Of a stretch of DNA of 64,000 nt, positions 1-52,220 are shown piece by piece. The position numbers and the translations under genes were made by a program. How positions within the stretch are numbered: the first letter of the stretch is position 1; each line of letters opens with the position of its first letter. The notes below the pieces were generated by a model, which ran no database searches, had not been told where the DNA came from, and saw only the letters and a list, made by a program, of their open reading frames with translations. Location: positions 62,001 through 126,000 of IMG/VR virus record IMGVR_UViG_3300042350_004191. One strand, given 5' to 3'.

Positions 1-921
1 CTTGATGGTTCTTATTATTTTGATGCTCCTTGGACTAGGTGGTTTATAAATTTAGGCAACGGTCCTATATCTGGCACTAATTACGATAGTTTTTTTGAAA
101 TATATGTTTATCCGAATGAAATTAAAAAAATAAACTATAATGGAACTTCTTATTCTGTACTAGAATCATACAATTTAAGCAATTCCCAACAAATAGCTGT
201 AAAAGTTAATACACTTGAACAAAACTTAAGTTCATTGGCAGATCCTCCAAATTATATTCAACCAAGTGCTACATTAACTAATTTTAGTGGAACACCATTT
301 GAAGTTGGACAAACAGTTACACAAACATTAACTTTAGATTGGACTCAAGGAAGTGCTGGTAGTTTTACAACAGGCACATTTTCTAGAAATGGTTCGGTTA
401 TATTAACCAATACTGTTTTACCTTCAACATATAATGTTAATGAAATTACAGGAACATCCTCAATAACATATAGAAATACTGTCAATTATAATCAAGGTCC
501 TATATTGAACAATTCATTAGGATATCCCGATCCTACTGGAAGAATTGCTGCTGGTTCTAAATTTATTGAAGTATCTCATCGCGGTTATTATAAAATGTTT
601 TTTGGTAGTGTTCCAACTGGACAAATACCAGCAAACCTTAGAAATTTACCAAGTAATAAATTTGATTTAGCTGGTGCTTCTGGTTCAATAGCACCAACAG
701 AATTTGGGACGATAAGTGCAGTAAACATTGTATTTGTTTTACCAACACCAAGAGTATTAACTTCTGTAATAACAGATTCAAACGAGGATCTTACTTCAAG
801 TTTTACACTTTCACCAACATCCATAACCTTACCAAATGGATCTACATACTCCTATAATTATTACAGACTAACAACAGTTATTCCTTTGGGAATACCGTTT
901 AGAACAATTACCTACGCATGA
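1..921 (+). CDS. Virion structural protein, 5'-truncated (beta-rich, Thr/Ser-rich)
   Basis: Frame 1 reads without a stop from base 1 (LDGSYYFDAPW...) into the ORF-track protein 235..921, so the TTG at 235 is not the true start. Ends in an ATGA overlap with the next gene. Confidence 0.7.
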   Translation, partial: LDGSYYFDAPWTRWFINLGNGPISGTNYDSFFEIYVYPNEIKKINYNGTSYSVLESYNLSNSQQIAVKVNTLEQNLSSLADPPNYIQPSATLTNFSGTPFEVGQTVTQTLTLDWTQGSAGSFTTGTFSRNGSVILTNTVLPSTYNVNEITGTSSITYRNTVNYNQGPILNNSLGYPDPTGRIAAGSKFIEVSHRGYYKMFFGSVPTGQIPANLRNLPSNKFDLAGASGSIAPTEFGTISAVNIVFVLPTPRVLTSVITDSNEDLTSSFTLSPTSITLPNGSTYSYNYYRLTTVIPLGIPFRTITYA

Positions 922-1589
922 GTTATCCTTTTCCAACATTTCCATTAGTTAAAAGAGTTGGCTTAACCACAGCCGCATCTAATGTTGATGCGCGTTATGG
1001 TCCATGGTTATCTATTAATGATGCATTAACATCATTCAATGCTGGCCTTAGATCAAAAGGTTTGACTGTTGGTATATACACGCCAAATGATAACATAAAC
1101 AGTCCTGTAATAGAATACTGGTGGAAGAGTGGTATAACAGATAATGATTTAATCTTAAAACAGCCTGAAGAAACCAATCAAGGTAAGATTAAAATTTTAT
1201 CTAATAATGAATTTACATTAAGTGCCAGTTCTTTTTCTTCGTTTTTTAAATCAGTTACAAGTTCAAACGATTTTACTTTTTCAAATTTTTTATCAGGTGC
1301 TTCCATAACATTATATGTTTCTGCAAATCATGTAGGTTATTTTAGACATTATGTTCCACAAACGTCTTTTATAGGAAATGCGGGTGAAGGTAATACATTT
1401 TTTACATTTGAAAACAAAATTACAAAATTAACATTACAAAATGTTGGGGATTATTATATAGGTTTAGCTGATCCTGTTTCTTATGATGTTGTTCAAGTAA
1501 CCGCTCCTACGGGTGATAGTATACTTCTAGATGCTTATATTGGTTATCTTAAACTAGAAAATGGATACTATATACTTTTAGACCAGTAA
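918..1589 (+). CDS. Putative fibre/appendage adaptor protein
   Basis: N-terminal VDARYGPW...R.KGLTVGI...EYWW motif of the kind seen in phage fibre proteins; ends in YLKLENGYYILLDQ. Confidence 0.55.
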   Translation: MSYPFPTFPLVKRVGLTTAASNVDARYGPWLSINDALTSFNAGLRSKGLTVGIYTPNDNINSPVIEYWWKSGITDNDLILKQPEETNQGKIKILSNNEFTLSASSFSSFFKSVTSSNDFTFSNFLSGASITLYVSANHVGYFRHYVPQTSFIGNAGEGNTFFTFENKITKLTLQNVGDYYIGLADPVSYDVVQVTAPTGDSILLDAYIGYLKLENGYYILLDQ

Positions 1590-1601
1590 GTAATTAGATA
1601 T

Positions 1602-2294
1602 ATGGCTGATTTAAGAATATCGCAATTGAATCAAGTGGTAACACCCACTTTAAATGATATATTTCCTGTTGTAAATTCTGCGGAAACCAAAAGAATAACT
1701 TTTGGTAATATTAATAATTCATTGCCAACTACCACCTTTGTCAGGGCCAATTCTGGTATATGGAACAAAACTTTAGATTCAGCAAGAATGGAAATAAACG
1801 GAAATGTAGGTATAGGAAATACGCTTAATAATGTTGAATATATTGTTAATTGGAACAGTTTAACTTATCAAACTAATAGTGGTGTAATCGAAGCCGACAT
1901 AACAAATGATAATATGATCATAAAAGAAACTGGTAACTATTTGGTAAGTGCCAGATATTCCAGCTATGACCTAACAGATGATACCGACAGCTTAAGAATA
2001 AGAATAAGGGGAGCATTTAATTCTCCTATAACCACAATAAGCAGTGGAATTTTATTAGAAACATTACAAGAAAGTTTTATAAACATGGATTCGGGAATAT
2101 TTGGAACAAATGTTAATGGAAGAGCATCTGTCTGTGGAACTGTTGTTTTAAGAATTACACAAGTTCCTTATTATTTGGCTGCTACCATATTACATAGAGG
2201 AGGCTCTGCTATAGGCGGAACTACTGGTTATCCTGTATTTGAAAACTCTTTAGGTTCACAGCCATATTTTACTATACAAAGATTAACATACTAA
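1602..2294 (+). CDS. Short fibre protein with C1q/BclA-CTD-like head
   Basis: Starts MADLRISQL. C-terminal domain (IKETGNYLVSARYSSYDL...GYPVFEN...QPYFTIQRL) is clearly paralogous to the end of 3753..4547. Confidence 0.6.
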   Translation: MADLRISQLNQVVTPTLNDIFPVVNSAETKRITFGNINNSLPTTTFVRANSGIWNKTLDSARMEINGNVGIGNTLNNVEYIVNWNSLTYQTNSGVIEADITNDNMIIKETGNYLVSARYSSYDLTDDTDSLRIRIRGAFNSPITTISSGILLETLQESFINMDSGIFGTNVNGRASVCGTVVLRITQVPYYLAATILHRGGSAIGGTTGYPVFENSLGSQPYFTIQRLTY

Positions 2295-2295
2295 T

Positions 2296-2505
2296 ATGAA
2301 ATACTATATTTTAATAAATCCGTTTACATTTAAACCTATACAGTTTTCAACTTTTATAGACGAAGACTTTACCGTTGCGAATATACCTGAAGAAATTACT
2401 AGCAATACTGTAATTGAAAGTAAAAAAGCTTTATGTATCGAAAGTGAGTATGATCCTACTTTAATGGAAAAAACTTACGACCCTGAAACAGGAACATTTA
2501 ATTAA
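2296..2505 (+). CDS. Small putative fibre chaperone/accessory protein
   Basis: 69 aa, ends EYDPTLMEKTYDPETGTFN; paralogue of 43647..43856; both follow a C1q-like fibre gene. Confidence 0.5.
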   Translation: MKYYILINPFTFKPIQFSTFIDEDFTVANIPEEITSNTVIESKKALCIESEYDPTLMEKTYDPETGTFN

Positions 2506-2507
2506 AA

Positions 2508-3740: not shown

Positions 3741-3752
3741 AATTTTTTATAT

Positions 3753-4547
3753 ATGATTAATTTACGGGATTATTATTATACAACGCAATTCATGGGTGCA
3801 ACGGCTAATAGAGTCGGTGTAGCTGGTTTTGTTCCTACTGCTTATCCACAAGATGCATTAAAATTTTTAAGAGGAGATGGTACATGGCAAAATGCTGGTG
3901 GTGGTTCTACAGGAGCTACAGGTATAACTGGTGCTACAGGTCCGATTGGTGCTACGGGATTAACTGGTATGGGAGCTACTGGACAAACAGGAATAACTGG
4001 TCCAACAGGTCCAGCGGGTAGTGATGATCCTTATTTTGGATTAAGAATAAATGGAAATTTTGGACTAACAAACACTACAAACGGTATTGAATCTATAATT
4101 CAATGGAACAGTAGTTATATGAATAATTCGGTTAATGCTGTATTTGGCAGTATTAATACTAGAAATTTCGAGATATATCAAAGCGGTTTATATAACATAG
4201 AAGTTCGATATGCATCTTATAACTTAGTAGATGCTGGTGATTTTTTGAGAATACGTTTGTATGGAAGCACTAGTGTAATAACTAATGCTAATTTAAATAC
4301 AGCAACTTTGTTACACACACTAGATCATGGGTTTGTTGATACCACAGGACCTGGTGAATCTTTTAAACAGGGATCTGTTACCTTAACTCTTGGACCAGCT
4401 ATCGGTGGCCCTTATTATATAGTGGCAACATGTTTACATGGTGGAGCTAACGGTGGTAATGGAAATCAAGGATATCCAGTATTTGATAATGTTTGGGGAA
4501 ATCAACCTTATATGATTGTAAGAAGAGTGTCAGGTCCTTCTATTTAA
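3753..4547 (+). CDS. Short collagen-like fibre with C1q/BclA-CTD-like head
   Basis: GFVP...KFLRGDGTW motif, short G-X-T run ([16 protein letters not shown]), head domain paralogous to 1602..2294. Confidence 0.7.
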   Translation: MINLRDYYYTTQFMGATANRVGVAGFVPTAYPQDALKFLRGDGTWQNAGGGSTGATGITGATGPIGATGLTGMGATGQTGITGPTGPAGSDDPYFGLRINGNFGLTNTTNGIESIIQWNSSYMNNSVNAVFGSINTRNFEIYQSGLYNIEVRYASYNLVDAGDFLRIRLYGSTSVITNANLNTATLLHTLDHGFVDTTGPGESFKQGSVTLTLGPAIGGPYYIVATCLHGGANGGNGNQGYPVFDNVWGNQPYMIVRRVSGPSI

Positions 4548-4558
4548 CAAAATTAAAA

Positions 4559-4566
4559 GATAAATA
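4559..4566 (+). promoter_or_regulatory. T4-type late promoter (GATAAATA)
   Basis: Matches the TATAAATA late consensus at 7 of 8 positions; 7 nt before the gp13 ATG. Confidence 0.55.
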
Positions 4567-4573
4567 ATATACA

Positions 4574-5925: not shown

Positions 5926-5950
5926 TGTAAATAATATTATAACATAATAT

Positions 5951-6622: not shown

Positions 6623-6632
6623 ATAGTATTAT

Positions 6633-6854: not shown

Positions 6855-6865
6855 TTTTATAGCAT

Positions 6866-7753: not shown

Positions 7754-7769
7754 TATAATTTTTAAGTTG

Positions 7770-7792: not shown

Positions 7793-7824
7793 GACGTTAT
7801 CCAAAATAGAAAGAAAAAGCATAT

Positions 7825-19205: not shown

Positions 19206-22200
19206 ATGAACCCATATAGTGTATCGGCAATAGGCATTTGGCCCAACGAAAAATATCTGTACAAAATAGATCCTTCTATTATTGATTTCAGATATGGCGT
19301 ATTGCCTATGACTGTATTTTCTTCTCCGCAATTATCAGAAGACAATAATTTTGCTGTAATAGACTACAATAAACCGGATTTTAACAGTAATTTAATCGGA
19401 ATAAGTTCGAATGCAGGATATATCTATACTGATAGTGATGGTTTTTTTAAATCTTTCTTAACACCTAATTTGACTTTTTCATGGACTCCTTCGGCATTAA
19501 GAACCGGAAACTATGGAAATATGTTAAATGCTATTTTATTAAATACTAGTGATTGGAAATATTTCACGGTAGTTTCATACCCTTCAGAGTTATTTTTATA
19601 CCCAGTCGAAATATCTAAAATAGATAATGTGGCAAGATATGAAACAGATATAACTTCTTTATCGGTTTATACAATATCCGAGCTATTATCTACCTATTCT
19701 AATATAGAAACCATGAGTTCAGCAGGTTTAACTGCTACCGAACTTCAAACGCCGCTTATTTCGTCTATCAATTATGCTATTAGTTCTTTAAACAGTTTAG
19801 AAACAACTTTAGACATCGTATGGTATAATGCGGTTTCTTCTGGAGAAGTCACTACTAATTTTAAATTTATTAGTTCTGTAACAACAGATTTTTTTGGACA
19901 GTCTTTATCAACATTTTCTTATGTTACATTAGAGAATGTAATATGTTCTTATTATATAAACATAGATAATTTTATTGTAGATTACAATACCATAACTACA
20001 TTAGAAAATTATGTATCTAGTGTAACATTTTTAGATAAAATAACAGCAATAGATTATAAAACTTTTTTTGAAATAGCTACTTCCAGAAGTTATGCTTTAC
20101 AAACTTCTTCTATATTATTAAAACCTTACGATTTTCAATTTCTTTCCAAAAACGAGTACGCCACAACAATAAAAACTAAACACAGTGATTATTTGTCAAG
20201 AATTCCAGAAGCATTACCACTAAATGACAATAATCTCAAAACTATTTCTTATACTTTATCGGGGGCATTAGTTAATTGTAATAAAAGTTTAATAAATTTC
20301 ACAGAAACTAATAATCCTATTTATGGAAACTTTATATTAGAAGACGAAGGCGCAAATATAAGACCAGAAACAGTAAAAATTGCATATAAAATTCATTATG
20401 CAAATATGAACTCAACAAGAGAACCTAAAGAAATAACAAGTTTAGGTGATTTGTATGATGATATGTTTTTAGATTCAGATAGGTCTATCGAATCTTCTTA
20501 TATTGTTAGTAAAAATAATAATAAACTAACATTTCAATTATTACAATCAGCATTGAATTTAATCTTACCATTAGAACACCCAACAAACTGTGTATTGAGT
20601 GCTATTTTAGATTTAGACAAATGTACATTAGAATATGTAAACCAAAGATTTCCCACTTTCAATGCAATATATAATGATTTTACTCCGATATCAGGGTTTC
20701 CCGGCACTGACTTGTCTGTTCGTTACATAGCCGATAGTCCCGTTGATAACCAAAAGAAATCATTAGAAACGACTGTTTTGAACATATCCAGTAATTACGG
20801 AAATTTTTCATTAAATTCAGCAGTATCTTGTAAATCTGACAATCATGTTATTAATTGGACATTAGAATATCCACCATATTATTATAGTTTTAAAAATACA
20901 TTTGTAGACAAAAATAACAGAACATATTCAAATGTAAATTCTTTGGGCTTTTATCTATCTTCAGAAGTATTTTTTAATGAAATAATAAAACCCAACCCTA
21001 ATGATTTCACAGAAGACTATGCAAGAATAGATTTATACACAAGCGTTTATTCCGATTTTGATATTATTCAACTCCCTCTGTCACTATATGCAATTGATGA
21101 TTATATCAAATATGAATTAGTATATAGAGATCAAACTTTATTTTTAAACAACTTGTCAGCATTTTTAGTTTTACAAGAAGACAGAAGCGAAGTTTTGTCG
21201 TTTTCTTCTACTTTAATTCCTAATAGTAATTTTGTACCATATGATATAATCAATTCACCATATGTTCCTGCGGTTTCTGGTGTTTTTCTAAGACTAATTT
21301 ATAACTTAGACAATGGTGGCGCAGTATTTTCTGTTAAACCTTCTTTGTCAACAAAGATCGGTGCATTCGATGCTTTTTGGGGTACTACATTTTCAAGTGG
21401 TATAACATATAAACCAAGAAACTTTGTTAAAAATCCTCCTTTAGACACTATTGCTAAAACTATTACCAGTGCTACATTTTCTGTAGAATCTTTAACAGGT
21501 ATAGATATTTTTGGTCCAGATCTAAGGAATACAAACGTAAGATGGGATTATAAAAGTAATGGATCGAATCATTTAAAATTAATTAATAGAACCAAAGGAG
21601 ATATAGGAATTTTTACAGAAATTGTACCAAACAGTTCTTACCTTTTTAATGTGGCTAATGTCGTAGAACTAACTGGACTGAGTAATGAAACTGTAGATGT
21701 AACTTTTTATTCTGAAGAATATAATGTCAGTTCTACCAGAATAGTCTTGCCAGAATTGTTTGATTTGTATTATGAAAACAGAGTAAACATAAATTTTGAA
21801 CCTATAACCTTAAAAGAAAAAATCAAAATATTAAAATGCGATATAAGTGTGCCATTTTTCGGCAAAAATTTTAATATAACTGGCTCAGAGAGGATAAAAT
21901 GGAATTGGATATATGATAATATTACAAACCCAGATCTAGCTCCAGTAACAGCGTTTTATTTGAATAACAATAATCTAGTAACTTATGATATAGATACTAT
22001 AGGTCTAGCAACACTTAGTACATTATATTTTTATATAGACACAAACTACACAATAGTAGAAGAGTTAAATCCTTTAAGTGCTTTTGTCGAAGTCTATAGT
22101 TTAGGCGAAGTTTATTCTGGTAAAAATGTTTTTGATGTTAATTCATATCCAGATCCAACTATTTTTAGTACAGATTTTTATGTAACATATCCTAACTTTC

Positions 22201-24266
22201 CTTCATATCAATTGATCAATACAGATAGTAATATTAAATCTTTAACAAGACCACCCAACGGAACTAATATATACAACATCACTCCTTTTGAACTTAAAAC
22301 CAGAAATGTTTCAATTAGTGGAATGAATTGGAAAATTAAAAGAACAGTTTTAAATTCGTTTAGCAATACTCTTTCAACAAACGAAGAAGAATTGTCCTTA
22401 ACTCCGAATGCTTCTGGTTTTTATGATGATATTATCTTAAACAGAGATTATAATTTATACAACATAACTTCTAAAAAATATTATAATAATGAAATTTTTA
22501 CAAGTAATTCTCCATTAGTATTTTCGTCCTTACCAATTACTAATATTACTGATCTTTTAAACTTAAGTTCATATTTAATTTTACCAGATTTAATAACCAA
22601 TAATGTTTTTGTAACAAATATAACTGCTACAGAAAATATCTCACCATTAGCTACATCTATAAATTTTATAACAACATCGTATTATATAACATCGTTTGAT
22701 GTTGTAGATAGTATTGATATAGTTAAAAATTTAAACAATCTTTATACATATTCATTTTATACTTCCACCAATTTTATTAATATAAATAATCAACCTGTTG
22801 AATATACTATTTTTAATGTAAACTATTGGTTATCAGCAAATTATACTATAAAAACTGATAAACAAACTGAAATTGATGCTTTTAGTTCTTTGTACATAAA
22901 TCCCAACTTAAATAATTTTCTTTCATATAATTCAGTTATCAATCCAACTACAACAGTCGAATATGATGTTACTAAAAAAGAAATAGAAAAAAATTTATAT
23001 GCAATATATGATATTTCTTTAAATGCCGAAAGTGTTAGTATTCCTAACTGGACAAACTTATACGACTTTTCAAAGTCTGGACAGATTATTGTAGCAACCG
23101 ACACAGAATTTATTACTTTACCAAAATTAATTTTGACACCAAATTTTGTTTGGGTTCCTCAATGGAAATCACCTAATTTTTCTAAATTATCAAATAAGTT
23201 TGTCACTGTACTTTCTGGCTACAATCCCAATAACATTTTTCAGTTTTTGACAGGAAAAACTTATGGAAACAGGAAAGATAATTTTCAAGAATATAATGTG
23301 ATTGTTCAAGATGTTCAAGAATTCAAAATAAACAAATTACAAGATTCTATAACAATATTTTTAGGCGCAGGTTCTAATAATGAATTTATACAAGATCAAA
23401 TAATTGATCGACCAGAAGAATATCGTTTTACTGATAATGGAGAAAAAACTATATTAATTGAAAATTTCAGAATTCCAATAAAACCAGAAATATATAGCAC
23501 TGATGGTATGGTTGTTTATCTAACAGCATATAATAAATTTTTTCCCACTACTGGCGGTTTACAATATTATGGGTTGAATTCATTAACCGCAACAGAATTA
23601 ACACTTTTTAACTATCCTATAACAGCAAGAACTTTAAACAAAGACATAGCTTGGGATAATGAAAAACCAACTGAGTTTGAAATAGACAATTTCTTATTCG
23701 ATGCTGTATATCATAATCCAAAACTTTTTGAGTATGAAAAAGCAAAATTGTTATTCTATCCTAATATTATAAACATTAATTTGGATACTGAAAGATTGAT
23801 TCAAGTCAAACAAATTCTGGAAATAAATCCTTTAGAATCTCCTAATGAGATTGAGGTAGATAAAAGTACAGTTACATATGAATTAAAATCTGATTACTGG
23901 TCTGTTTCATCTGTTGTTCCTGCTGTATCAAATAGATACTTTGATTTGTTTAGATTAACTGTGGGGGATTCTACAATTCCATTAACTGTTTCAAACTTTG
24001 AAAGAAGTACATTATTTTTAAGTGCTACTGCAAATATAGCTACTAAAATACCTCCAATGACTTTTAATAGAACAGCCTCAAGTCAATATACAGGACCAAC
24101 CGATTTATGGAATACAGTATATCAAAAAGCAATAGGAAATGAAGAAACACCGTCTGAACAGTATAAAATCTTATTTTCAGAGGTAAATAGTCTTAGTACT
24201 TCAACCGGAACGGTCAGTACATATAATACACTTGCTATTAATGATAATTTAATTTTGACAACATGA
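19206..24266 (+). CDS. Very large beta-rich virion structural protein (1,686 aa)
   Basis: Long ORF in the baseplate operon, Asn/Ser/Thr/Ile-rich; no family recognised. Confidence 0.6.
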   Translation: MNPYSVSAIGIWPNEKYLYKIDPSIIDFRYGVLPMTVFSSPQLSEDNNFAVIDYNKPDFNSNLIGISSNAGYIYTDSDGFFKSFLTPNLTFSWTPSALRTGNYGNMLNAILLNTSDWKYFTVVSYPSELFLYPVEISKIDNVARYETDITSLSVYTISELLSTYSNIETMSSAGLTATELQTPLISSINYAISSLNSLETTLDIVWYNAVSSGEVTTNFKFISSVTTDFFGQSLSTFSYVTLENVICSYYINIDNFIVDYNTITTLENYVSSVTFLDKITAIDYKTFFEIATSRSYALQTSSILLKPYDFQFLSKNEYATTIKTKHSDYLSRIPEALPLNDNNLKTISYTLSGALVNCNKSLINFTETNNPIYGNFILEDEGANIRPETVKIAYKIHYANMNSTREPKEITSLGDLYDDMFLDSDRSIESSYIVSKNNNKLTFQLLQSALNLILPLEHPTNCVLSAILDLDKCTLEYVNQRFPTFNAIYNDFTPISGFPGTDLSVRYIADSPVDNQKKSLETTVLNISSNYGNFSLNSAVSCKSDNHVINWTLEYPPYYYSFKNTFVDKNNRTYSNVNSLGFYLSSEVFFNEIIKPNPNDFTEDYARIDLYTSVYSDFDIIQLPLSLYAIDDYIKYELVYRDQTLFLNNLSAFLVLQEDRSEVLSFSSTLIPNSNFVPYDIINSPYVPAVSGVFLRLIYNLDNGGAVFSVKPSLSTKIGAFDAFWGTTFSSGITYKPRNFVKNPPLDTIAKTITSATFSVESLTGIDIFGPDLRNTNVRWDYKSNGSNHLKLINRTKGDIGIFTEIVPNSSYLFNVANVVELTGLSNETVDVTFYSEEYNVSSTRIVLPELFDLYYENRVNINFEPITLKEKIKILKCDISVPFFGKNFNITGSERIKWNWIYDNITNPDLAPVTAFYLNNNNLVTYDIDTIGLATLSTLYFYIDTNYTIVEELNPLSAFVEVYSLGEVYSGKNVFDVNSYPDPTIFSTDFYVTYPNFPSYQLINTDSNIKSLTRPPNGTNIYNITPFELKTRNVSISGMNWKIKRTVLNSFSNTLSTNEEELSLTPNASGFYDDIILNRDYNLYNITSKKYYNNEIFTSNSPLVFSSLPITNITDLLNLSSYLILPDLITNNVFVTNITATENISPLATSINFITTSYYITSFDVVDSIDIVKNLNNLYTYSFYTSTNFININNQPVEYTIFNVNYWLSANYTIKTDKQTEIDAFSSLYINPNLNNFLSYNSVINPTTTVEYDVTKKEIEKNLYAIYDISLNAESVSIPNWTNLYDFSKSGQIIVATDTEFITLPKLILTPNFVWVPQWKSPNFSKLSNKFVTVLSGYNPNNIFQFLTGKTYGNRKDNFQEYNVIVQDVQEFKINKLQDSITIFLGAGSNNEFIQDQIIDRPEEYRFTDNGEKTILIENFRIPIKPEIYSTDGMVVYLTAYNKFFPTTGGLQYYGLNSLTATELTLFNYPITARTLNKDIAWDNEKPTEFEIDNFLFDAVYHNPKLFEYEKAKLLFYPNIININLDTERLIQVKQILEINPLESPNEIEVDKSTVTYELKSDYWSVSSVVPAVSNRYFDLFRLTVGDSTIPLTVSNFERSTLFLSATANIATKIPPMTFNRTASSQYTGPTDLWNTVYQKAIGNEETPSEQYKILFSEVNSLSTSTGTVSTYNTLAINDNLILTT

Positions 24267-27136
24267 GCGATTTTTTTCCCATACAAATTAGACACTTAGA
24301 AAGTTTATCAGAACCTATTTGTAGTTCTGATGTTTTTCCTTTACAAATAGGAAATTTAATTGATGGCTTTGAAACCAGAGCATCTAAAATGTCTGATGTT
24401 CTTAGTTATGTAAATTTACAAAATCAAAATACTAATATTTCCAATTTAAATGTTTCAAATTCTGCTGTTGTCAGTAATCTTTTATATATCGGAAACGTAA
24501 ACGAAATAAATGGTGTTAAATTTTACGTAGACGGAAATGCGATTATTAGTGGAACATTAAGTGCTCTTAGTGGTATTACATATTTCAACACAAATATTGC
24601 ACAAACTACTGCTTTGTTTTTATCAGGTGCTTCTGGTGTAGGATTGAAAGTTACGCAAGATTTTGAATTTCCGATTGCTCAATTTTATGATTCTAACAAC
24701 ATAGCTTTGCATGTTGATGGTACGTCTGAACGCGCAGGGAACGTAGGTATTAAAACTGTTGTTCCAAATGAATCTTTAACCGTTATAGGTAATATAAGCT
24801 CTACAGGTACAGTTTTTGGGGAGGGATTGAGTGCCAATACTGGTTACGTTAATTATCTTAGCTCTTACAATTTACATGTAATTGGCAGTGCTATCCTTGA
24901 CTCTGAAACGAATTCTAGCCTTACTATAGGAAATCTAGTATCGTCAAAAACAACAATATACGGTGATGTTTTTATTAACGCAGTAACTGCGGCCAGTTCT
25001 TACAATACATACATAGGAAATGTTAATTCAGATGTTTACGTTAATGGTTATCTTTTTACAAAAAATTTATCATCTGGTGGAAACATTTTTATCAATAATA
25101 TTAATGGCGAAAATTCTCAGTTTAATTTAGGAAATCCTGATGCCGTAAACAATATAACTGGAACTACTATCTTGAGTGGTAATGTTTATATAGATGGTAA
25201 CATTGTTTTAAATGGTGGTGATAATGACAATACTTTTATAAATTCTAACGGTAATAAAGGAAAAGTTTATATAGGAAATCCTGAAAATTCTTCTGAAATA
25301 AATTCTAGTTTATTAACACATAACGCAAATTTAACAAGCGAATTATTTGTTTCAAATTACACTGATTTTGATGCTTTAACCTCTAATATAGATACTTTAT
25401 ATGATGATTTTTCAATTGTTTATTTAGTATCTGCTGTCAATTTATTAAATCCCAGTATAACTAGTGTACAATACAAATACGTTGAAAATGTAGAAGGTTT
25501 AAAAATAGATTTAAATAACAAAAATATTAATTTAGGAAAATCTAATTTTGCTACAAACATAAATGGTAATGTAATAAACTCAAAAGCTGGATTACTTTTA
25601 AATTTATATACTTTATCTGGAGGTCAGGTAAAGATAGGTGATCAAAATAACACTGTAGACTTACGTGGGTTTAATTTAAGAATTAATGATTCTGGTGATG
25701 GTGTTACTAAAAATACTTACATAAACACAGAGTTAGATTCTGGTAACATAGAAATTGGAAATCCTTTAAATTTTACAGGTATTAATGGTTTTAATACACA
25801 TATCAATACTCTTTCCGCTGGTGAAACTGTTATAGGGAATGTCAGTGGAAGTGTTAAAGTATATAACCTTACTATATTAAATTCATTATCATCTTTGGTC
25901 GATACATTTAACGTTTCTAACGTAAATTCTCAAAATATTATTGTATCAAACACATCGAGTCTTAATAATACAAACATAGGTGGAACATTAAATACAACAG
26001 GCGATGCTTTATTTGTAAATCGTGTCGGTGTTGGTGTTCCTCCGCAAGAAAAGCTAACTGTATCAGGGAATATATCTGCTTCTGGTTTTGTATCTGCAAA
26101 TACATTATCTTTAAATAACATTAACCAAAACACTTTGACTGTTACTGGAAACACCTCTAGTTATGGTTCAACAACAATATACAATGAAAGTAATAATCCT
26201 GCCTTAAAAATTACACACACTGGTTCTGGTAATGTATTAGAAATTGAAGACCAAACTGAGGATACAACAATCTTTAGGATTAAAGAAGATGGTAAAATTA
26301 TTGCAGGAACCGCTGCTTTAAGTTCATTGTTTAATGAAGGTCTTTTTAATTTGGTTTCAGATAATAGAGCAATTAATACATATAAATTTGGAAATAATAA
26401 TACATCAGGTTCTTTTTATAATTATAAAACCAGAGGCAATAATGAAAATGAACATGTAATTTTAAATGCTGGTGATTTTACATCAGTTTGGGAAGCTCAT
26501 GTTTCCAATGGTTTAACATATATAGCAAATTCCAGAATAGATGCACGAATCGATCCAAATTATCAAACAACAGCATCATCGATGCCGTCCAGAATTAATT
26601 TTTATACAACCTCACCCAATACAACAAGTAGAGATATAAAGTTTTTGATAGATAGCACCGGAAATGTTGGTATAGGAACAAACGTACAAACAGTAACAGC
26701 CGCTCCTAATGAAAAATTGACTGTTGTTGGTAATATTTCTGCTACAGGTAAAGTTTATTCTGATAACGGAAATTCAGATATATGGAATCAACCAAGCATA
26801 AATTTAGTATTACCTATAACACAAGATGCACAGGTTATATCATCTGGTGATGGTGTTTTTACATTATATTCACCACAAACCTTCAGATTAACCAAAGCCA
26901 AGGTAAGTCTAAATATTCCATCAGAGAATACAGTAACAGCCACATTAAGTTCTATTACAAACAACCAATCTATAACAACCTTAACTTTACCAGCAAATAC
27001 TGGTTTTGTTGCAACAGATTCAAATTTATCTTATTTAATAAACGAAGATGACAGAATTACTTTGAATATAAACAGTGTCGGAACCGGATTTAACGGGGCT
27101 GGTTTAAAGATATATTTAACAGGTCGGTACGTATAA
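24263..27136 (+). CDS. Tail fibre-like protein
   Basis: Three copies of [GN]xVG[IV]...P.E[SK]LTV.GNIS[SA].G plus INxxG-type beta repeats; ATGA-coupled to the upstream gene. Confidence 0.7.
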   Translation: MSDFFPIQIRHLESLSEPICSSDVFPLQIGNLIDGFETRASKMSDVLSYVNLQNQNTNISNLNVSNSAVVSNLLYIGNVNEINGVKFYVDGNAIISGTLSALSGITYFNTNIAQTTALFLSGASGVGLKVTQDFEFPIAQFYDSNNIALHVDGTSERAGNVGIKTVVPNESLTVIGNISSTGTVFGEGLSANTGYVNYLSSYNLHVIGSAILDSETNSSLTIGNLVSSKTTIYGDVFINAVTAASSYNTYIGNVNSDVYVNGYLFTKNLSSGGNIFINNINGENSQFNLGNPDAVNNITGTTILSGNVYIDGNIVLNGGDNDNTFINSNGNKGKVYIGNPENSSEINSSLLTHNANLTSELFVSNYTDFDALTSNIDTLYDDFSIVYLVSAVNLLNPSITSVQYKYVENVEGLKIDLNNKNINLGKSNFATNINGNVINSKAGLLLNLYTLSGGQVKIGDQNNTVDLRGFNLRINDSGDGVTKNTYINTELDSGNIEIGNPLNFTGINGFNTHINTLSAGETVIGNVSGSVKVYNLTILNSLSSLVDTFNVSNVNSQNIIVSNTSSLNNTNIGGTLNTTGDALFVNRVGVGVPPQEKLTVSGNISASGFVSANTLSLNNINQNTLTVTGNTSSYGSTTIYNESNNPALKITHTGSGNVLEIEDQTEDTTIFRIKEDGKIIAGTAALSSLFNEGLFNLVSDNRAINTYKFGNNNTSGSFYNYKTRGNNENEHVILNAGDFTSVWEAHVSNGLTYIANSRIDARIDPNYQTTASSMPSRINFYTTSPNTTSRDIKFLIDSTGNVGIGTNVQTVTAAPNEKLTVVGNISATGKVYSDNGNSDIWNQPSINLVLPITQDAQVISSGDGVFTLYSPQTFRLTKAKVSLNIPSENTVTATLSSITNNQSITTLTLPANTGFVATDSNLSYLINEDDRITLNINSVGTGFNGAGLKIYLTGRYV

Positions 27137-35235: not shown

Positions 35236-36114
35236 ATGAAAAATATATCATTAAATCTTCCAAACGCATCTGATAATATCGGTGATTCTATTAATAAATT
35301 AAATAACATTTTTAATAATCTAAAAGGTTATATTGATGATTTAAATGATGTAAAAGGTGTATCTGAAAATTTTCAAGATTCTGTGAATGTCTGGTTAGGT
35401 GAATTACAATATAGCCTAGACTTCATGAATAAGAATAATAAGAAATATTTAAATCTTTTTGAAGAAGTTTTAAATAAAACAGATCTGTTGGTTAAACCTT
35501 TAATATTATTCTATCCTACAAAAATAAGGTCTGATGTTGCGGCATATGACAGATTATATACACAAAATCTCATTCATGATTGGATCAGTAAATACTATCC
35601 AATAAAAACACCAAATATAGAAAAGCCTAACTATGTTGAAGGTCAAAAGGCTGTAATTTATTTTTTAAGAAATGAAGAAATAAAAGCAGAAAGAAATGAA
35701 AATCAAAGTGATTTGATTCAATGTTTTACACAAGATAGACCCTTATATGTTGCCTGTGTTACGAGAAGAACTGGACAGGTCTGTGTACCAGGTTGTGGTT
35801 GTGTAGGATGTGCTGGACAAACATATTGTTCAAATTCGGCTTTTTTAGATTGTTATTTTCCTGATGGGGGTATTAGGAGAAATACTGTTTTAAGATATTT
35901 GGCATTATATATGAAATATACATATGAAGATTTTTCTGAAAAAAGATTCGATATTGTAAGATTTATAGTTGATGAGTGTGAATGGAAAATTGATAATACC
36001 CCTATAATTAGTACACCTAAAACTCCACCAAAAAATATAGAAAACGGTATTGAGACTTTTGTTGTAAAAGATCAAATACAAACTTTTACGAAAGATGATA
36101 TAGATCCGTTTTAA
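35236..36114 (+). CDS. Coiled-coil virion protein with 8-Cys insert (paralogue family member 2)
   Basis: DNIGDSINKLNNIFNNL N-terminus, PLILFYP, DWI.K.YP, Cys-rich insert. Confidence 0.65.
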   Translation: MKNISLNLPNASDNIGDSINKLNNIFNNLKGYIDDLNDVKGVSENFQDSVNVWLGELQYSLDFMNKNNKKYLNLFEEVLNKTDLLVKPLILFYPTKIRSDVAAYDRLYTQNLIHDWISKYYPIKTPNIEKPNYVEGQKAVIYFLRNEEIKAERNENQSDLIQCFTQDRPLYVACVTRRTGQVCVPGCGCVGCAGQTYCSNSAFLDCYFPDGGIRRNTVLRYLALYMKYTYEDFSEKRFDIVRFIVDECEWKIDNTPIISTPKTPPKNIENGIETFVVKDQIQTFTKDDIDPF

Positions 36115-36140: not shown

Positions 36141-36962
36141 ATGCCTGTAAATTTTAACAATTTTTCTGACGGTGGTAGTAATATAGCACTTAATTCTTTT
36201 TTTGTTGGTTTTGATAGTACTCAAACGGGTGGTGAAAAAAAGTGGTCTTGGATCAATTTAAGAAGAGCAATAAGAGCACTTGTAGCTTCTTCTACTTATG
36301 TAGGAGTTGAAACAGTTATAGGTTGTACACAGACAGGTCTTGGTTACTTTAGTAAGGACACTCTAGCAATAGGTGCTTATAATCCAACACCAAGTGATTC
36401 GCGTTATTTGGCAGATTTTAACTGGCAAAAACAAAACGGAACTCAAGAAGTTCAAAGAATGGAAGCTACTGCTATAGCCACCTATAAGCCTTGGCAAAGT
36501 TTCTTCCCCTATAAACCAGAAAGTGGTTTAGCTGGTATAGATTTTCCCAATTACGCGATTAGTTCAACTAAAATGCAAGTACAACAAGGCACCATGGATA
36601 GCAGTACTAGCAATGAAAACATGAGATATACTCTTTATGTGGATTGGCAAAGAAGAAGAGCTTTTATAACTGGTATGTATATGTTGGCTAGTGGTAGTTA
36701 TAATACTGCGGTGTTTAATAGGGGTTGGACTTTTAATAATGATACAGGACCACAATCAATTCAAACAGATGGGTTTGGTGGAAATGTTTTAGGAGAAAGA
36801 AATATTATTAATGCTTATTATGCTAGTGGAGGTCAGGGTCCTTACATAGTTCATGTTAATAATGGAGGTATACATGCATTGCCTGTTTGGAATTTTGCTC
36901 CCGCTTTTAATGAAACAAGCAATGTTTCTATTTTTATAGAAAATACATATCTAGGTTCATAA
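36141..36962 (+). CDS. Putative fibre tip/receptor-binding protein
   Basis: N-terminal MPVNFNNF...FFVGFD...GEKK module; GATAAATA at 36127-36134. Confidence 0.5.
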   Translation: MPVNFNNFSDGGSNIALNSFFVGFDSTQTGGEKKWSWINLRRAIRALVASSTYVGVETVIGCTQTGLGYFSKDTLAIGAYNPTPSDSRYLADFNWQKQNGTQEVQRMEATAIATYKPWQSFFPYKPESGLAGIDFPNYAISSTKMQVQQGTMDSSTSNENMRYTLYVDWQRRRAFITGMYMLASGSYNTAVFNRGWTFNNDTGPQSIQTDGFGGNVLGERNIINAYYASGGQGPYIVHVNNGGIHALPVWNFAPAFNETSNVSIFIENTYLGS

Positions 36963-36974: not shown

Positions 36975-38441
36975 ATGGAAGATAATTTATTAAGTTTAGA
37001 ATTAGATGATAATGTAGGTGATGGATTAGCAAAAATAAACTATAACCTTCTAAATATCAATCAAGAATGTTGTACGATAGATTCTTTTTATAAAGAAAAT
37101 ACTAGGTTTCTAAATGATTTAGAAAACTTAATGGACAGAATAGATGTGCTTTTACCTGATGTAAATTATGACTTTTTAGAAAAATTAGAAGCTACTGTAC
37201 AGGTTTTGAGTGGTTATTGGAATAATTTAGAAATGTCTGTACAGTACCCATTCAACCCTATTAATGGATATGTCAGTTCTATTGTTGCTGCTGGAGAATT
37301 AGGTTCTCTTGTTTCACGCACTACACAAAATGAACAGATTGATTTAATTGCTGATACATTGGTTAAACAGGGAGTTTATTCGTCAAGGTTTGAAGCTAAA
37401 GAAGGATTCGATGATTTAGATATGGTTATAGTTTTTCGAGACGATAATGGAAATTTTACTTATTGGCAGTATCTTTATAAAAGTCTTATTTTAAATTTTA
37501 CTGTAGATAATCAAAATAATTTATACTATAACGAAAGATTGGTAGACATATATAGATTACCTTATTTTAGTGTAATTGCACCTAGAAATATAGATCTTTC
37601 AATTCAGGGAACAACTGTGGATTTTAATGATAAAGTTATTTATGTTGGGAATAACATAATACAGGCCAGTAGAGAGACTTTAAATAATTCATTTATTCAA
37701 TATACAACAGTAACAAGAAGACAATTATCTCAAACAGAAGAAACCTTGGATGTGACAACGTACACTCCTACAATAAAAAATTTAAGTGAAATAATTCCAG
37801 TTAATAATCCAACATATAAAGCAAAAATTAAAAAATTTAATGATGATGTATTAGAAAGTGTATTACAAAATCCTTTATTGAACACTATATCTTTAAGGTT
37901 TTTAAATAAATCTTATGCACCGAATAAATTTACGGATGGAAACATAATTAATGTAGTATTTTTCTTATATAATACAATAGGTTTGAATACTTCAAAAGCA
38001 AACATAGCAACGTCTTATTATGGTTTAGATGTTACTACTCCGAGAAATAATGCTAAAGTTAGGACTTTTCAAAATGAAATAACCGAAGTCGCACCATCGT
38101 CAAATACAACATTTTCTGTAAATTTTTCAAAAACCGATGTTTATGTTGAAAGAATTGTTCTTGTAAAATATAAAAAAGTTTCTAAAGTAGAATTTATAAC
38201 AAACGAAAGTACGGGAAAAGTTACCCCTAGAACTATACACTATTGGGAATTTGTTAATGCAAACATAGGTCCCAAATATAGAAAAGGTAACAGAACCAAA
38301 GTTAATGTAGATAATGCTCCTGTTTATGTAAGAAGAGCACCTACAGTATCTGAAATTAAGTTATTCCCAACTCAAATCATAACCCAAACTGGGGATATCC
38401 TAAATGATAGAAAAGGAAATACTTTCTTAATAGAAACTTGA
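36975..38441 (+). CDS. Coiled-coil virion protein (paralogue family member 3)
   Basis: DDNVGDGLAKINYNLLNI, SVQYP, FLNKSYAP..F.DG.IINVVFFL; ends IITQTGDILNDRKGNTFLIET. Confidence 0.65.
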   Translation: MEDNLLSLELDDNVGDGLAKINYNLLNINQECCTIDSFYKENTRFLNDLENLMDRIDVLLPDVNYDFLEKLEATVQVLSGYWNNLEMSVQYPFNPINGYVSSIVAAGELGSLVSRTTQNEQIDLIADTLVKQGVYSSRFEAKEGFDDLDMVIVFRDDNGNFTYWQYLYKSLILNFTVDNQNNLYYNERLVDIYRLPYFSVIAPRNIDLSIQGTTVDFNDKVIYVGNNIIQASRETLNNSFIQYTTVTRRQLSQTEETLDVTTYTPTIKNLSEIIPVNNPTYKAKIKKFNDDVLESVLQNPLLNTISLRFLNKSYAPNKFTDGNIINVVFFLYNTIGLNTSKANIATSYYGLDVTTPRNNAKVRTFQNEITEVAPSSNTTFSVNFSKTDVYVERIVLVKYKKVSKVEFITNESTGKVTPRTIHYWEFVNANIGPKYRKGNRTKVNVDNAPVYVRRAPTVSEIKLFPTQIITQTGDILNDRKGNTFLIET

Positions 38442-38469: not shown

Positions 38470-39066
38470 ATGGCTAATGTAACTTTTAATGACCTTCCTA
38501 ACAGAACAACCGTAGGAAATAATGATTTTTTTGTCATTAATAGTTCTGACAGAACTGTTTTGCCCGAAGGTAAAGTAGGATTTAATGTATTAAAAAATGC
38601 AATACAAAGTAATACATTAACATCAAATTATTTTAGAAGTACTACTAATAATGTACAAGTAAAAACTGCTGCTACAGGTGATAATTTAATTACTATCAAT
38701 GATTCAGGAAGATTATTCACTTTTCCTAAAAGAAATAGTAATGCATATGGAATATTTCAGTTAAGTTGTAAAAGAACAGGGCCTGTTGCGTTAACAAATG
38801 TATTAGCATTTTTTAATCTAAAATGGTATAATAGAAGTACACAAACAACTAATGCGGTTGGCTTACTTGGTAGTTTAGATCCATTAAGTTTACCTATAAA
38901 TAACGGTTCAGGTTCACCCTCTAGCTCCACTATTCACAATACATTTTTAAGTATTCCTGTTGGTGACGGTATAGGATATATGCAATTAGAAGTAAGTTTT
39001 TCTTTAAATTTACCAAATGCAAGGGCTGTAGTCGAAACTAGCAGTTGGTTATTTCAAACAACATAA
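38470..39066 (+). CDS. Short fibre/tip protein
   Basis: MANVTFNDLP...NDFFVIN...EGKV N-terminal module; followed by a tail-fibre chaperone. Confidence 0.55.
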   Translation: MANVTFNDLPNRTTVGNNDFFVINSSDRTVLPEGKVGFNVLKNAIQSNTLTSNYFRSTTNNVQVKTAATGDNLITINDSGRLFTFPKRNSNAYGIFQLSCKRTGPVALTNVLAFFNLKWYNRSTQTTNAVGLLGSLDPLSLPINNGSGSPSSSTIHNTFLSIPVGDGIGYMQLEVSFSLNLPNARAVVETSSWLFQTT

Positions 39067-48213: not shown

Positions 48214-50933
<2,720 letters not shown>

Positions 50934-52220
50934 TTACATTATATTTATCAACAATTCACCATCAATAGTATAAAGCGGTAAACCGTTTATTGAATAAAGT
51001 GCAAGATTGTCAATATAACTAGTAGTTATTTGATTAATTTTTATTCCACTAATTCCTCTAAAAAATGTTGAATCTTTAGATTGTGGAAAAAGATTATTTA
51101 TCTTGTTTTTTATATCTTTAGTCATTCTCCCATAACCTGCTTCATTTTGTACTATAAGATCTAATGTTACTGGATAATCATATGGAAATAAATCTGTATT
51201 TAATTGAGGCAATTCAAAATAAATCAAACCAGAATCATAAGAAAATGCTGAAACAGGAACTGCATTAAATGAAGGATAAATTTGTTCCATATAGGTTCCT
51301 GAAAATGGATTAAAATACGAAACAGGTGTTGTAAAAATGTTTGGATTATCGGCACTTAAGTATAAGTTTGTTAAATTTGAAAAACTTTCACCAAAAACAG
51401 CAACACTTTTATGATCAGTTGTTTGACCAGAAAGAAAATAAAAACTTGTAGGACTTACATATCTAATCTGAGGTCTAGCTGATATGGCTGTGCTAAAAGT
51501 TTCATATTGATCTAGGTCTGTTATTAAATCGTCAGATATTAAATCTTGTTCATTGACCGGAACATAATCTGTATTGATTACATATATCTTTTTATAAGTT
51601 TCTATATAATCTGTACTCTTAAATAACCATCCTTTTATAGTAAAAGAAGTATCTGCTGTCACTCTAAACGATTGGTTTGCCCCTAAATCTGTTGGATATT
51701 GTACGTTTATATTACCAGACCATAATACTTCTGTTCTTATTTCATAATCTTTTCCATAAGACACAGGTAATTTCCAAGATATAACTATATAAGGGTCGCA
51801 ATAAGGAACAAAGTTAGATATAATTTGATCCATATCGGTCTGATATTTGGTTATAATAGTCATATTAATACCAATATTAATCGGAACAGGTTGTCTGATT
51901 CCTTTTATAAATTCTCTTTCATCACCCGCTATAGACAATGCATCAATATTAAAACCACTGTTTTTATTAAAAACTCTAGATTGATCTCTTTGAATCGAAC
52001 CGATGTTTATAGCTACGGCGGGTACAGTTAGACCACCGGGTGCTGGCTTTTTAAGCGTTTCTACAACCCTTTGTTTAGGTGCATATACAAAATTAACTTT
52101 AAATTGACTCTGTGGAATATTACTGTCTTTAGCAAATCTTTTTACTATAATATCATTGAATGCAGAGGTAAATTGCTCAATTAATGTTTGTATTTCTTTA
52201 TTATAAGTCCATTTCTTCAC
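50934..52220 (-). CDS. gp15: Tail terminator/sheath stabiliser, T4 gp15-like, with C-terminal IPT/Ig-like extension
   Basis: F...FNDI.V.R, YAPKQR, D.SR..N, PVPINI...M.I.TK...DMDQII..F.PY, FTIKGWLF; followed by PQIRYVSP...V.GESF. GTG start. Confidence 0.85.
   Translation of the reverse strand: MKKWTYNKEIQTLIEQFTSAFNDIIVKRFAKDSNIPQSQFKVNFVYAPKQRVVETLKKPAPGGLTVPAVAINIGSIQRDQSRVFNKNSGFNIDALSIAGDEREFIKGIRQPVPINIGINMTIITKYQTDMDQIISNFVPYCDPYIVISWKLPVSYGKDYEIRTEVLWSGNINVQYPTDLGANQSFRVTADTSFTIKGWLFKSTDYIETYKKIYVINTDYVPVNEQDLISDDLITDLDQYETFSTAISARPQIRYVSPTSFYFLSGQTTDHKSVAVFGESFSNLTNLYLSADNPNIFTTPVSYFNPFSGTYMEQIYPSFNAVPVSAFSYDSGLIYFELPQLNTDLFPYDYPVTLDLIVQNEAGYGRMTKDIKNKINNLFPQSKDSTFFRGISGIKINQITTSYIDNLALYSINGLPLYTIDGELLINIM

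What the first reader, a model, noticed from the sequence alone, without database searches (positions are those of the whole stretch)
1513..1720. Recurrent plug-and-socket gene pairs: a C-terminal peptide followed by a gene with a shared N-terminal module (five junctions)
Seen in sequence: five otherwise dissimilar structural genes end in a short beta-hairpin-like peptide, and each next gene starts with a similar ~40-aa module, roughly M..[IF].[QNDH][LF]....[ND][DS].F[PV]....E.[KR]. The pairs are: 918..1589 (YLKLENGYYILLDQ) then 1602 (MADLRISQL..NDIFPV..ETKR); 19206..24266 (TLAINDNLILTT) then 24263 (IQIRHL..SDVFPL..ETRA); 35236..36114 (IQTFTKDDIDPF) then 36141 (VNFNNF..NSFFVG..GEKK); 36975..38441 (IITQTGDILNDRKGNTFLIET) then 38470 (VTFNDL..NDFFVI..EGKV); and gp15 (LYSINGLPLYTIDGELLINIM) then 50927 (NFTQF..NDYFVG..EIKG). 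Inference: the tail peptide is a docking plug that binds the N-terminal socket of the adjacent fibre. That would be a reusable connector for bolting swappable fibres onto baseplate, neck and other parts. I know of no named system for it.
Basis: partly seen in the sequence, partly recalled or inferred. Interest (0 to 1): 0.8.

Follow-up and report, generated by a model that had tools for sequence, protein, structure and literature searches.

The report
Peptide-and-module connector for phage fibres
In this marine T4-like phage and many other tailed phages, a structural protein ends in a roughly 20-residue peptide and the fibre gene right after it starts with a roughly 45-residue module; this looks like a reusable snap-fit for mounting swappable fibres, but binding has not been shown.

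Summary
Four of the five N-terminal modules (genes at 1602, 36141, 38470, 50927-) belong to a large family that Pfam does not cover. It sits almost only at residue 1 of phage fibre-like proteins with unrelated bodies. The fifth (24263) is not supported.

The C-terminal peptides are also real. In viral contigs chosen by the module, 39 of 46 distinct upstream proteins end in a conserved peptide (LLQE[ND]G..ILQE[ND]...I.L), against 0 of 1262 other ORFs. In contigs chosen by the peptide, 56 of 72 are followed at once by a module gene.

Peptide subtypes track module subtypes across non-homologous carriers: gp15, tiny Cys-rich proteins, and proteins of 150-860 aa. In relatives of this phage, the peptide and the following fibre gene are present or absent together.

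Third codon positions vary most, and stop-to-start spacing varies in all three frames. So this is protein-level selection, not a read-through fusion.

Binding itself is untested, and the structure models were poor for the module and the peptide.

The closest known case is the branching-domain/conserved-peptide docking of Klebsiella phage receptor-binding proteins. This is a new variant of that kind.

Cultured T4-like phages (Cronobacter S13, Citrobacter Ci1, Aeromonas PX29) carry the pair between wac and gp13, so it can be tested.

The parts
918..1589 (+). Carrier 1: 223-aa fibre-like protein that ends in the connector peptide
   Evidence: ORF. No Pfam or PHROG hit. Its Atlas neighbours are phage tail-fibre-like clusters, which is a lead only.
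1521..1586 (+). Connector peptide 1 (last 22 residues; canonical LLxE.G..ILL type)
   Evidence: Top window hit of the peptide profile built from unrelated podovirus-like contigs: E 0.077, 3 residues from the C-terminus. Translation checked.
1602..1739 (+). N-terminal module 1 (46 aa) of the fibre gene 1602-2294
   Evidence: Independent profile E 8e-18. Canonical-subgroup profile E 4e-22. AF2 gives a hairpin at 20-33 and a helix at 34-40, with low confidence.
1602..2294 (+). Fibre 1 (230 aa). Its C-terminal domain is shared with 3753-4547.
35236..36114 (+). Carrier 3 (292 aa)
   Evidence: Orthologues in L005, L007, L009 and L011.
36001..36111 (+). 37-aa C-terminal extension of carrier 3: a Pro/Thr/Lys linker plus connector peptide 3 (ends DPF)
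   Evidence: Absent from orthologues that also lack the next fibre gene. Top hit of the subtype profile from L156/L158, E 5e-4, at the exact C-terminus. It is the only part shared with the L156 carrier.
36141..36278 (+). N-terminal module 3 of the fibre gene 36141-36962
   Evidence: Independent profile E 2e-5. It shares only its first ~56 aa with the L156 and L158 fibres.
36975..38441 (+). Carrier 4 (488 aa)
   Evidence: Orthologues at 46% identity in L005-L011.
38367..38438 (+). Connector peptide 4 (last 24 residues)
   Evidence: Profile from four relatives: E 9e-6, 3 residues from the C-terminus. Conserved next to the module gene in L005, L007, L010 and L011.
38470..38607 (+). N-terminal module 4 of the fibre gene 38470-39066
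   Evidence: Independent profile E 7e-15. Orthologues detected at E 1e-5 to 1e-10.
50934..52220 (-). Carrier 5: gp15 (tail sheath stabiliser), followed by an all-beta, Ig-like-looking domain, a linker and the connector peptide
   Evidence: PF16724 E 4e-21 over residues 5-220. AF2: residues ~250-365 all-beta with pLDDT 63-86; residues 368-391 pLDDT below 50. Alignment A9.
50937..51020 (-). Connector peptide 5 (last 28 residues of gp15)
   Evidence: Present in the gp15 of L151-L153, where a module gene follows. Absent in L005 and L009, where none follows. Carried on a separate protein in L147, L149 and L150. Subtype profile E 0.033, top hit.
50790..50927 (-). N-terminal module 5 of the collagen-like fibre gene 49689-50927
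   Evidence: Independent profile E 9e-7. Collagen repeats. Same subtype in L143-L153.
24228..24421 (+).
   Evidence: Independent profile E 0.4. Not recovered in the leave-one-out test. Only near-identical relatives are available.

Best explanation
This is a two-part connector made of protein. A virion protein (the carrier) ends in a tethered peptide of 20-28 residues. The peptide has two to three units of about eight residues: hydrophobic pair, polar residues, then a Gly/Asn/Asp turn. The fibre gene directly downstream starts with a module of about 45 residues (consensus MA.kKIs.L, D.fPiV, ETKKIT, L).

I propose that the peptide and the module assemble into one small joint, and that this joint fixes the trimeric fibre to the carrier. 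In the window this would mount fibres on gp15 at the neck and on three other structural proteins. Connector subtypes would keep the joints cognate.

The unit seems to move as a cassette of linker, peptide, stop codon and fibre gene, added to the 3' end of a structural gene.

Shown here: both motifs are real; they are tightly adjacent in both directions; subtypes co-vary; they are gained and lost together; selection acts on the protein.

Inferred, not shown: physical contact, stoichiometry, and the shape of the joint.
For: Module family:
- 163 cluster representatives at E<=1e-3 among 1.84 billion.
- 137 of the 151 listed start at residues 1-8.
- The bodies are unrelated (collagen, beta-helix, Collar, Gp10_C, BppL_N), and no Pfam family covers the module.

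Adjacency:
- 80 of 82 module genes have a same-strand ORF ending within 400 nt upstream, in nearly all cases within 0-14 nt.
- 45 of 52 distinct upstream proteins end in the peptide.
- In module-selected contigs, 39 of 46 upstream segments carry the peptide against 0 of 1262 others. In peptide-selected contigs, 56 of 72 are followed by a module against 36 of 4285 (Fisher 5e-68 and 3e-88; sequences dereplicated by identity only).
- The same holds in bacterial genome bins. Chance out-of-frame matches are never followed by a module.

Carriers are non-homologous: a Cys-rich 68-aa protein, proteins with a Pro/Thr linker, proteins of 151, 192, 288 and 516-858 aa, and gp15.

Natural experiments:
- Only the third of three paralogues in L061, the one next to the fibre gene, has the peptide.
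- Carrier 3 has the extension only where the fibre gene is present.
- The gp15 family shows the same pattern, and shows fused versus separate adaptors.
- Window pair 3 and the L156/L158 pairs share only the peptide and the module.

Subtype pairing.

Protein-level selection: differences per site at codon positions 1/2/3 are 0.24/0.13/0.32 for the peptide and 0.21/0.14/0.38 for the module. Stop-to-start distance runs from -4 to +54 nt in all frames, with -1 the most common.

A flexible tether precedes the peptide: AF2 pLDDT below 50 for gp15 residues 368-391, and Pro/Thr linkers in several carriers.
Against: - No binding or interface was tested. Co-folding was not available.
- AF2 monomer models give low confidence for the module (pLDDT 42-55) and only about 60 for the peptide.
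- The four peptide subtypes cannot be joined by one profile. Calling them one system rests on a shared periodic pattern and on context.
- About 15-20% of module genes lack the peptide upstream. Examples are the Klebsiella phage phiKp24 fibres and Halomonas phage QHHSV-1.
- About 20% of peptide carriers lack a module gene downstream.
- The loci are related to each other, so the Fisher p-values overstate independence.
- Genetic linkage within a cassette could produce subtype co-variation without any contact.
- Junction 2 of the window fails.
Confidence: 0.7

Rival explanations
1. The two motifs travel together but do not touch. The C-terminal peptide would be an oligomerisation or termination element of the carrier. 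The module would anchor the fibre to a third component, such as a T4gp10-like docking domain or the neck. Adjacency would then only reflect co-expression and cassette linkage.
For: Module-bearing fibres exist without any upstream peptide (phiKp24 gp101 and gp103-107; QHHSV-1; about 20 pairs). The phiKp24 paper models such N-terminal parts docking on T4gp10-like domains (PMC9700779). Some peptide carriers have no module gene after them.
Against: The peptide appears exactly when the fibre gene is present in otherwise orthologous carriers. It is added to only one of three paralogues, the one next to the fibre. Subtypes pair one to one on unrelated carriers. It is hard to see why a carrier-intrinsic element would do all this.
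Confidence: 0.17
2. The conservation is at the nucleic-acid level. The junction would be a translational-coupling, recoding or recombination site, and the peptide motifs a by-product.
For: Stop and start overlap (distance -1) in 45 of 93 canonical pairs, which suggests coupled translation. Conserved fibre 5' ends are a classic recombination site (general knowledge).
Against: Third codon positions vary most and second positions least in both motifs. Spacing runs from -4 to +54 nt in all three frames. Only one plug-module fusion ORF was found among 212 module-bearing and 184 plug-bearing open segments, out of 20,620 screened (L133). Subtypes keep their protein pattern with unrelated DNA.
Confidence: 0.05
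3. Chance resemblance of short low-complexity termini in an AT-rich genome.
For: Within the window alone, leave-one-out detection is weak (E 0.03-0.8). Junction 2 fails.
Against: Independent profiles detect four modules at E 2e-5 to 8e-18. Each of the four peptides is the top-ranked ORF at its exact C-terminus. The association holds in collections far outside this genome.
Confidence: 0.02

Closest known systems
Branching domain (T4gp10-like) plus conserved N-terminal docking peptide of secondary receptor-binding proteins: Klebsiella phages KP32, K11 and KP34; E. coli phages G7C, K1-5 and K1E; SP6; CBA120 (PMC6872550, PMC13352976)
   Same: A fibre or spike is mounted on the product of a neighbouring gene through a short conserved N-terminal element. 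The body is freely swappable. Different phage groups use different versions.
   Different: In those phages the partner is a folded T4gp10-like domain inside another receptor-binding protein. Here the partner is a 20-28-residue peptide at the extreme C-terminus of unrelated carriers, including gp15 and 60-70-aa proteins. Profile comparison of two window carriers with T4 gp10 found nothing. The module is longer (about 45 aa) and forms one sequence family across myo-, podo- and sipho-like contigs.
Hyperbranched tail fibres of Klebsiella jumbo phage phiKp24 (PMC9700779)
   Same: Six neighbouring fibre genes start with module-like N-termini that my profile detects (E 5e-9 to 2e-3 in a 9-protein set). 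The paper assigns such N-terminal parts to attachment at a docking site.
   Different: The genes upstream carry no C-terminal peptide. Docking there is modelled on T4gp10-like domains.
T4 fibre joints that follow gene order: gp10 with gp11/gp12, and gp34-35-36-37 (textbook knowledge, not tested here)
   Same: The product of the upstream gene holds the N-terminus of the product of the downstream gene.
   Different: No sequence relation was found. T4 gp10, gp11, gp12, gp13, gp14 and gp15 do not match the module profile. I did not run the peptide profile on them; by eye the printed C-termini show no peptide-like tail.
T4 fibritin (wac) N-terminal virion-binding domain
   Same: A neck-attached trimeric fibre whose N-terminus binds the virion. 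The first ten residues look alike. Pair 1 and the pairs in phages S13, Ci1 and PX29 lie next to gp13.
   Different: The module profile does not match T4 wac (1.8 bits for the whole protein, both aligned stretches negative). S13 and PX29 have wac as well as the pair, so the pair is a separate component.

Membership tests
Anchor-branch docking of receptor-binding proteins (T4gp10-like branching domain plus conserved N-terminal peptide) | The secondary fibre carries a conserved N-terminal docking element in front of a variable body | tested here: met
   Module at residues 1-8 in 137 of 151 hits, with unrelated bodies.
Anchor-branch docking of receptor-binding proteins (T4gp10-like branching domain plus conserved N-terminal peptide) | The partner protein contains a T4gp10-like branching domain | tested here: not met
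   hhalign of the carrier 3 and carrier 4 families against T4 gp10: probability 0.1. No Pfam hit in carriers 1, 3 and 4. Many carriers are only 61-77 aa long.
Anchor-branch docking of receptor-binding proteins (T4gp10-like branching domain plus conserved N-terminal peptide) | Loss of either element abolishes incorporation of the secondary fibre | not testable with these tools
   Needs phage genetics. It has been done for KP32, K11 and KP34 (PMC13352976).
T4 fibritin N-terminal domain | Sequence similarity to the wac N-terminus | tested here: not met
   Module profile against T4 wac: 1.8 bits for the whole protein, with both aligned stretches negative (-3.4 and -1.7 bits).
T4 gp15 tail sheath stabiliser (carrier 5) | Match to PF16724 above the curated cut-off | tested here: met
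   75.8 bits against a cut-off of 25, residues 5-220. PHROG 227.
Programmed read-through or frameshift fusion of two ORFs | Fixed frame relation and spacing between the two ORFs, or common fused forms | tested here: not met
   Distances from -4 to +54 nt in all three frames. One fused ORF only, among 212 module-bearing and 184 plug-bearing segments.
Lactococcal phage BppU-BppL baseplate joint | The C-terminal domain of the upstream BppU holds the N-terminus of the BppL trimer | not tested
   Only one module-bearing protein has a weak BppL_N hit in its body. The resemblance is from general knowledge.

The most novel reading that the evidence does not exclude
A general, portable tag-and-catcher system of tailed phages. 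A short C-terminal peptide and a matching N-terminal module, in several orthogonal subtypes, would let any virion protein (neck, baseplate, possibly head) acquire a fibre in one step, by in-frame insertion of a peptide-stop-fibre cassette. This would explain how accessory fibres spread across myo-, podo- and sipho-like phages. It would also give a natural parts kit for mounting chosen fibres.
Probability: 0.45. Interest if true: 0.8.

Novelty: new variant of a known kind. Interest (0 to 1): 0.68.

Why it matters
How accessory fibres are attached is unknown for most uncultured phages, and attachment modules limit the rational exchange of receptor-binding proteins. This pair:
- is recognisable from sequence alone;
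- occurs on unrelated carriers and fibre bodies, in phages linked to several bacterial phyla;
- marks which protein holds which fibre, for example fibres on gp15 at the neck of T4-like marine phages.

If the contact is confirmed, it gives an annotation rule for thousands of hypothetical proteins. It also explains how fibre cassettes are gained, and it provides small cognate docking parts.

Neither motif has a Pfam family. No solved structure matches either motif by sequence. The motif strings gave no relevant hit, only unrelated non-phage papers, in the literature searched.

Tried and rejected
- A near-identity search of window 1-12000 against GenBank phages found nothing.
- A word-based homologue search with the module region found only the phage itself.
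Subgroup alignments worked.
- My lead that the module is the T4 fibritin N-terminus was rejected.
- My lead that carriers 3 and 4 have a T4 gp10-like N-terminus was rejected.
- The podovirus-type peptide profile does not detect the T4-like subtypes, so there is no single profile for all peptides.
- Relatives of junction 2 were all near-identical, so that junction was not testable.
- The one natural fusion ORF (L133) could not be given a sound alignment, because MAFFT misplaced the carrier rows.
- Both AF2 models had low mean confidence (54 and 60), so I ran no fold search on them.
- PDB sequence searches with the module, the peptide and a 288-aa carrier found nothing.
- PHROG annotation of ten carriers gave almost no function.
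- I first read the C-terminus of the 930-aa L009 variant as intein-like. I did not follow this up, and it may be another peptide variant.

Full report
**Setting**

The window has 30.5% G+C. It comes from a 210.6-kb uncultured marine myovirus contig. No GenBank phage is close to it.

It encodes T4-type neck proteins (4574-5925), prohead protease, scaffold and major capsid protein (5951-9261), clamp loader, gp25 and gp6 (12584-14935), a run of large unannotated structural genes, and gp15 on the minus strand (50934-52220).

Between the end of the plus-strand structural block and gp15 lies an island that the closest relatives lack. It holds a methyltransferase, a GT2 glycosyltransferase and collagen-like fibre genes.

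**Observation**

Inside the window alone the N-terminal resemblance is only marginal. A leave-one-out profile recovers the omitted copy at E 0.03-0.8 at best. External data settle the matter.

A profile of the five copies plus six copies from related contigs was run against 1.84 billion cluster representatives. It found 163 proteins at E<=1e-3. In 137 of the 151 listed, the match starts within the first eight residues.

These proteins are 45 to 1427 aa long. Their bodies are unrelated: collagen, beta-helix, Collar, Gp10_C, BppL_N, lectin-like, and mostly unannotated. No Pfam family covers the N-terminus.

I then built a profile from 92 members that are each under 40% identical to any window copy. 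It detects the genes at 1602, 38470, 50927(-) and 36141 at E 8e-18, 7e-15, 9e-7 and 2e-5. It does not detect 24263 (E 0.4), and it finds no other copy. So four modules are real members of a large family, and the fifth is unsupported.

**The C-terminal peptide**

I expected this half of the claim to fail. It did not.

Eighty viral contigs were fetched using only the canonical module subgroup. In them, 80 of 82 module genes have a same-strand ORF ending within 400 nt upstream, in nearly all cases within 0-14 nt. Of 52 distinct upstream proteins, 45 end in one conserved peptide of the form LLQE[ND]G..ILQE[ND]...I.L, or a close variant.

The carriers are not related to each other. They include:
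- a Cys-rich protein of about 68 aa;
- proteins of about 70 aa that are little more than a Pro/Thr linker and the peptide;
- proteins of 151, 178-192, 288 and 516-858 aa.

The reciprocal test scanned viral contigs for a degenerate DNA pattern of the peptide only. It gave 123 in-frame matches, 92 of them within 12 residues of a stop codon.

Counting distinct sequences:
- In module-selected contigs, 39 of 46 segments that end just before a module gene carry the peptide, against 0 of 1262 other segments.
- In peptide-selected contigs, 56 of 72 peptide-ending segments are followed by a module, against 36 of 4285 others.
- Fisher p-values are 5e-68 and 3e-88. They are overstated, because the contigs are related to each other.

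The same pattern scan of 596 Gb of bacterial and archaeal genomes gave mostly chance out-of-frame matches, and none of those is followed by a module. It also gave about a dozen genuine C-terminal peptides, nine of them followed by a module gene. These come from bins of Bacteroidota, Patescibacteria, Gammaproteobacteria and others.

**Subtypes, and the window's own junctions**

The window uses four peptide/module subtypes.

Pair 1 (918-1589, then 1602) is the canonical type. The peptide profile built from unrelated contigs ranks this carrier first of 137 window ORFs, three residues from its end.

Pair 5 (gp15, then 50927-). In T4-like relatives with the same module subtype, there are two arrangements:
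- gp15 of about 245 aa is followed by a separate protein of 161-178 aa (or by two proteins of 138 and 77 aa) that ends in the same kind of peptide, and then by the module gene; or
- gp15 is a fusion of 415-439 aa that ends in the peptide.

The closest relatives have no module gene after gp15. Their gp15 has the extra all-beta domain but stops exactly before the peptide.

Pair 4 (36975-38441, then 38470). The peptide and module are conserved together in four relatives.

Pair 3 (35236-36114, then 36141). The window protein carries a 37-residue extension, made of a Pro/Thr/Lys linker plus the peptide. Its orthologues lack this extension, and those phages also lack the fibre gene. Two other contigs have the same peptide subtype and the same module subtype on carriers and fibre bodies that are otherwise unrelated. 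The only similar stretches are the last ~44 and the first ~56 residues.

Profiles of subtypes B, C and D, built from relatives only, each rank the expected window carrier first, at its very C-terminus (E 0.033, 9e-6 and 5e-4).

One further natural experiment: in contig L061, three tandem paralogues precede the fibre gene, and only the last one has the added peptide.

**Level of selection**

In moderately diverged pairs, differences per site at codon positions 1/2/3 are 0.24/0.13/0.32 in the peptide and 0.21/0.14/0.38 in the module. This is the signature of protein-level constraint.

The distance from stop to start ranges from -4 to +54 nt in all three frames. The most common value is -1, an overlapping stop and start, which suggests coupled translation.

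Only one ORF containing both motifs was found among 20,620 open segments, and it looks like a frameshifted variant. Read-through or frameshift fusion is therefore not the mechanism.

**Structure**

Neither motif matches any PDB sequence.

The AF2 monomer model of gp15 gives an all-beta domain at residues ~250-365 (pLDDT 63-86). A stretch with pLDDT below 50 follows at 368-391, and the peptide itself scores about 60.

The model of the 1602 protein gives a low-confidence hairpin (residues 20-33) and a short helix for the module.

This fits a tethered peptide and a module that need a partner, but it proves nothing. Co-folding was not possible with the tools.

The eight-residue periodicity of the peptide, and internal repeats of the second half of the module in some long fibre proteins, suggest an intertwined beta joint. 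That is inference only.

**Comparison with known systems**

[quoted passage not shown] It has been modelled for many others (PMC6872550). In those phages the partner is a T4gp10-like domain.

Here the partner is a terminal peptide on arbitrary carriers, and two window carriers show no gp10 similarity.

Six fibres of the jumbo phage phiKp24 start with module-like N-termini, but no peptide lies upstream of them. The paper on that phage models such N-terminal parts docking on T4gp10-like domains (PMC9700779). So the module may have more than one kind of partner.

T4 fibritin does not match the module profile.

The motif strings gave no relevant hit in the paper library.

I therefore class this as a new variant of a known kind.

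**Testable systems**

Cultured T4-like phages carry the pair between wac and gp13:
- Cronobacter phage S13 (gp094 and gp093);
- Citrobacter phage Ci1;
- Aeromonas phage PX29 (gp276 and gp275).

In all three, the carrier ends in a peptide of the expected pattern. The next gene, annotated as hypothetical or as a tail fibre repeat protein, starts with the module.

**Limits**

- Binding, stoichiometry and the geometry of the joint are untested.
- About one fifth of module genes, and about one fifth of peptide carriers, lack the expected neighbour.
- The four peptide subtypes are joined by pattern and context, not by a single profile.
- Genetic linkage could account for part of the subtype co-variation.
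- Junction 2 of the window is not supported.

Noticed in passing
window 48213-49682 (-) and 43858-45921 (-): Two collagen-like fibre genes share a different short N-terminal motif (M.LLSE[IL]YP[IL]) directly before the collagen repeats. This may be a second kind of attachment element.
   Followed up: no
window 1602-2294 and 3753-4547: The two fibre proteins share a homologous C-terminal domain (GYPVF.N..G.QPY ...) but have different N-termini: the module in one, a collagen-type start in the other.
   Followed up: partly
window 40247-50927: An island absent from the closest relatives lies between the structural block and gp15. It holds a methyltransferase (41157-41786), a GT2 glycosyltransferase (41790-43661) and several collagen-like fibre genes. 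This may be fibre modification.
   Followed up: partly
L077:281-487 and many loci in L063-L140: The most common carrier in podovirus-like marine contigs is a ~68-aa protein with a four-Cys motif (GCLC.DGTYS.KCCDG) in front of the peptide. It is encoded in the head-gene cluster, just upstream of the scaffold-like and capsid genes, so some of these fibres may sit on the head.
   Followed up: partly
L009:6842-9634 (-): In one relative the orthologue of carrier 4 is 930 aa instead of 486 aa and ends differently (...YYANNILVGN), yet the module gene still follows. This is either another peptide variant or an exception.
   Followed up: no
P0005, P0007, P0012, P0137: Some long proteins contain several internal copies of the second half of the module (D..v.sD.s....KKItf.n.k). 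The module may derive from a fibre shaft repeat.
   Followed up: no
L133:4788-5270: The only ORF that joins a carrier, most of its peptide and the module protein in one frame. It is probably a frameshift variant of the L116-type pair. It could serve as a single-chain model of the joint.
   Followed up: partly
L171, L200, L248, L288: A family of 593-858-aa proteins ends in a perfect canonical peptide, but no module gene follows. The partner may be encoded elsewhere.
   Followed up: no
window 60755-64000 (+): A long plus-strand ORF runs off the window end inside a minus-strand gene block. It has homologues at the same place in relatives (L005, L007) and looks like a large repetitive structural protein.
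   Followed up: no
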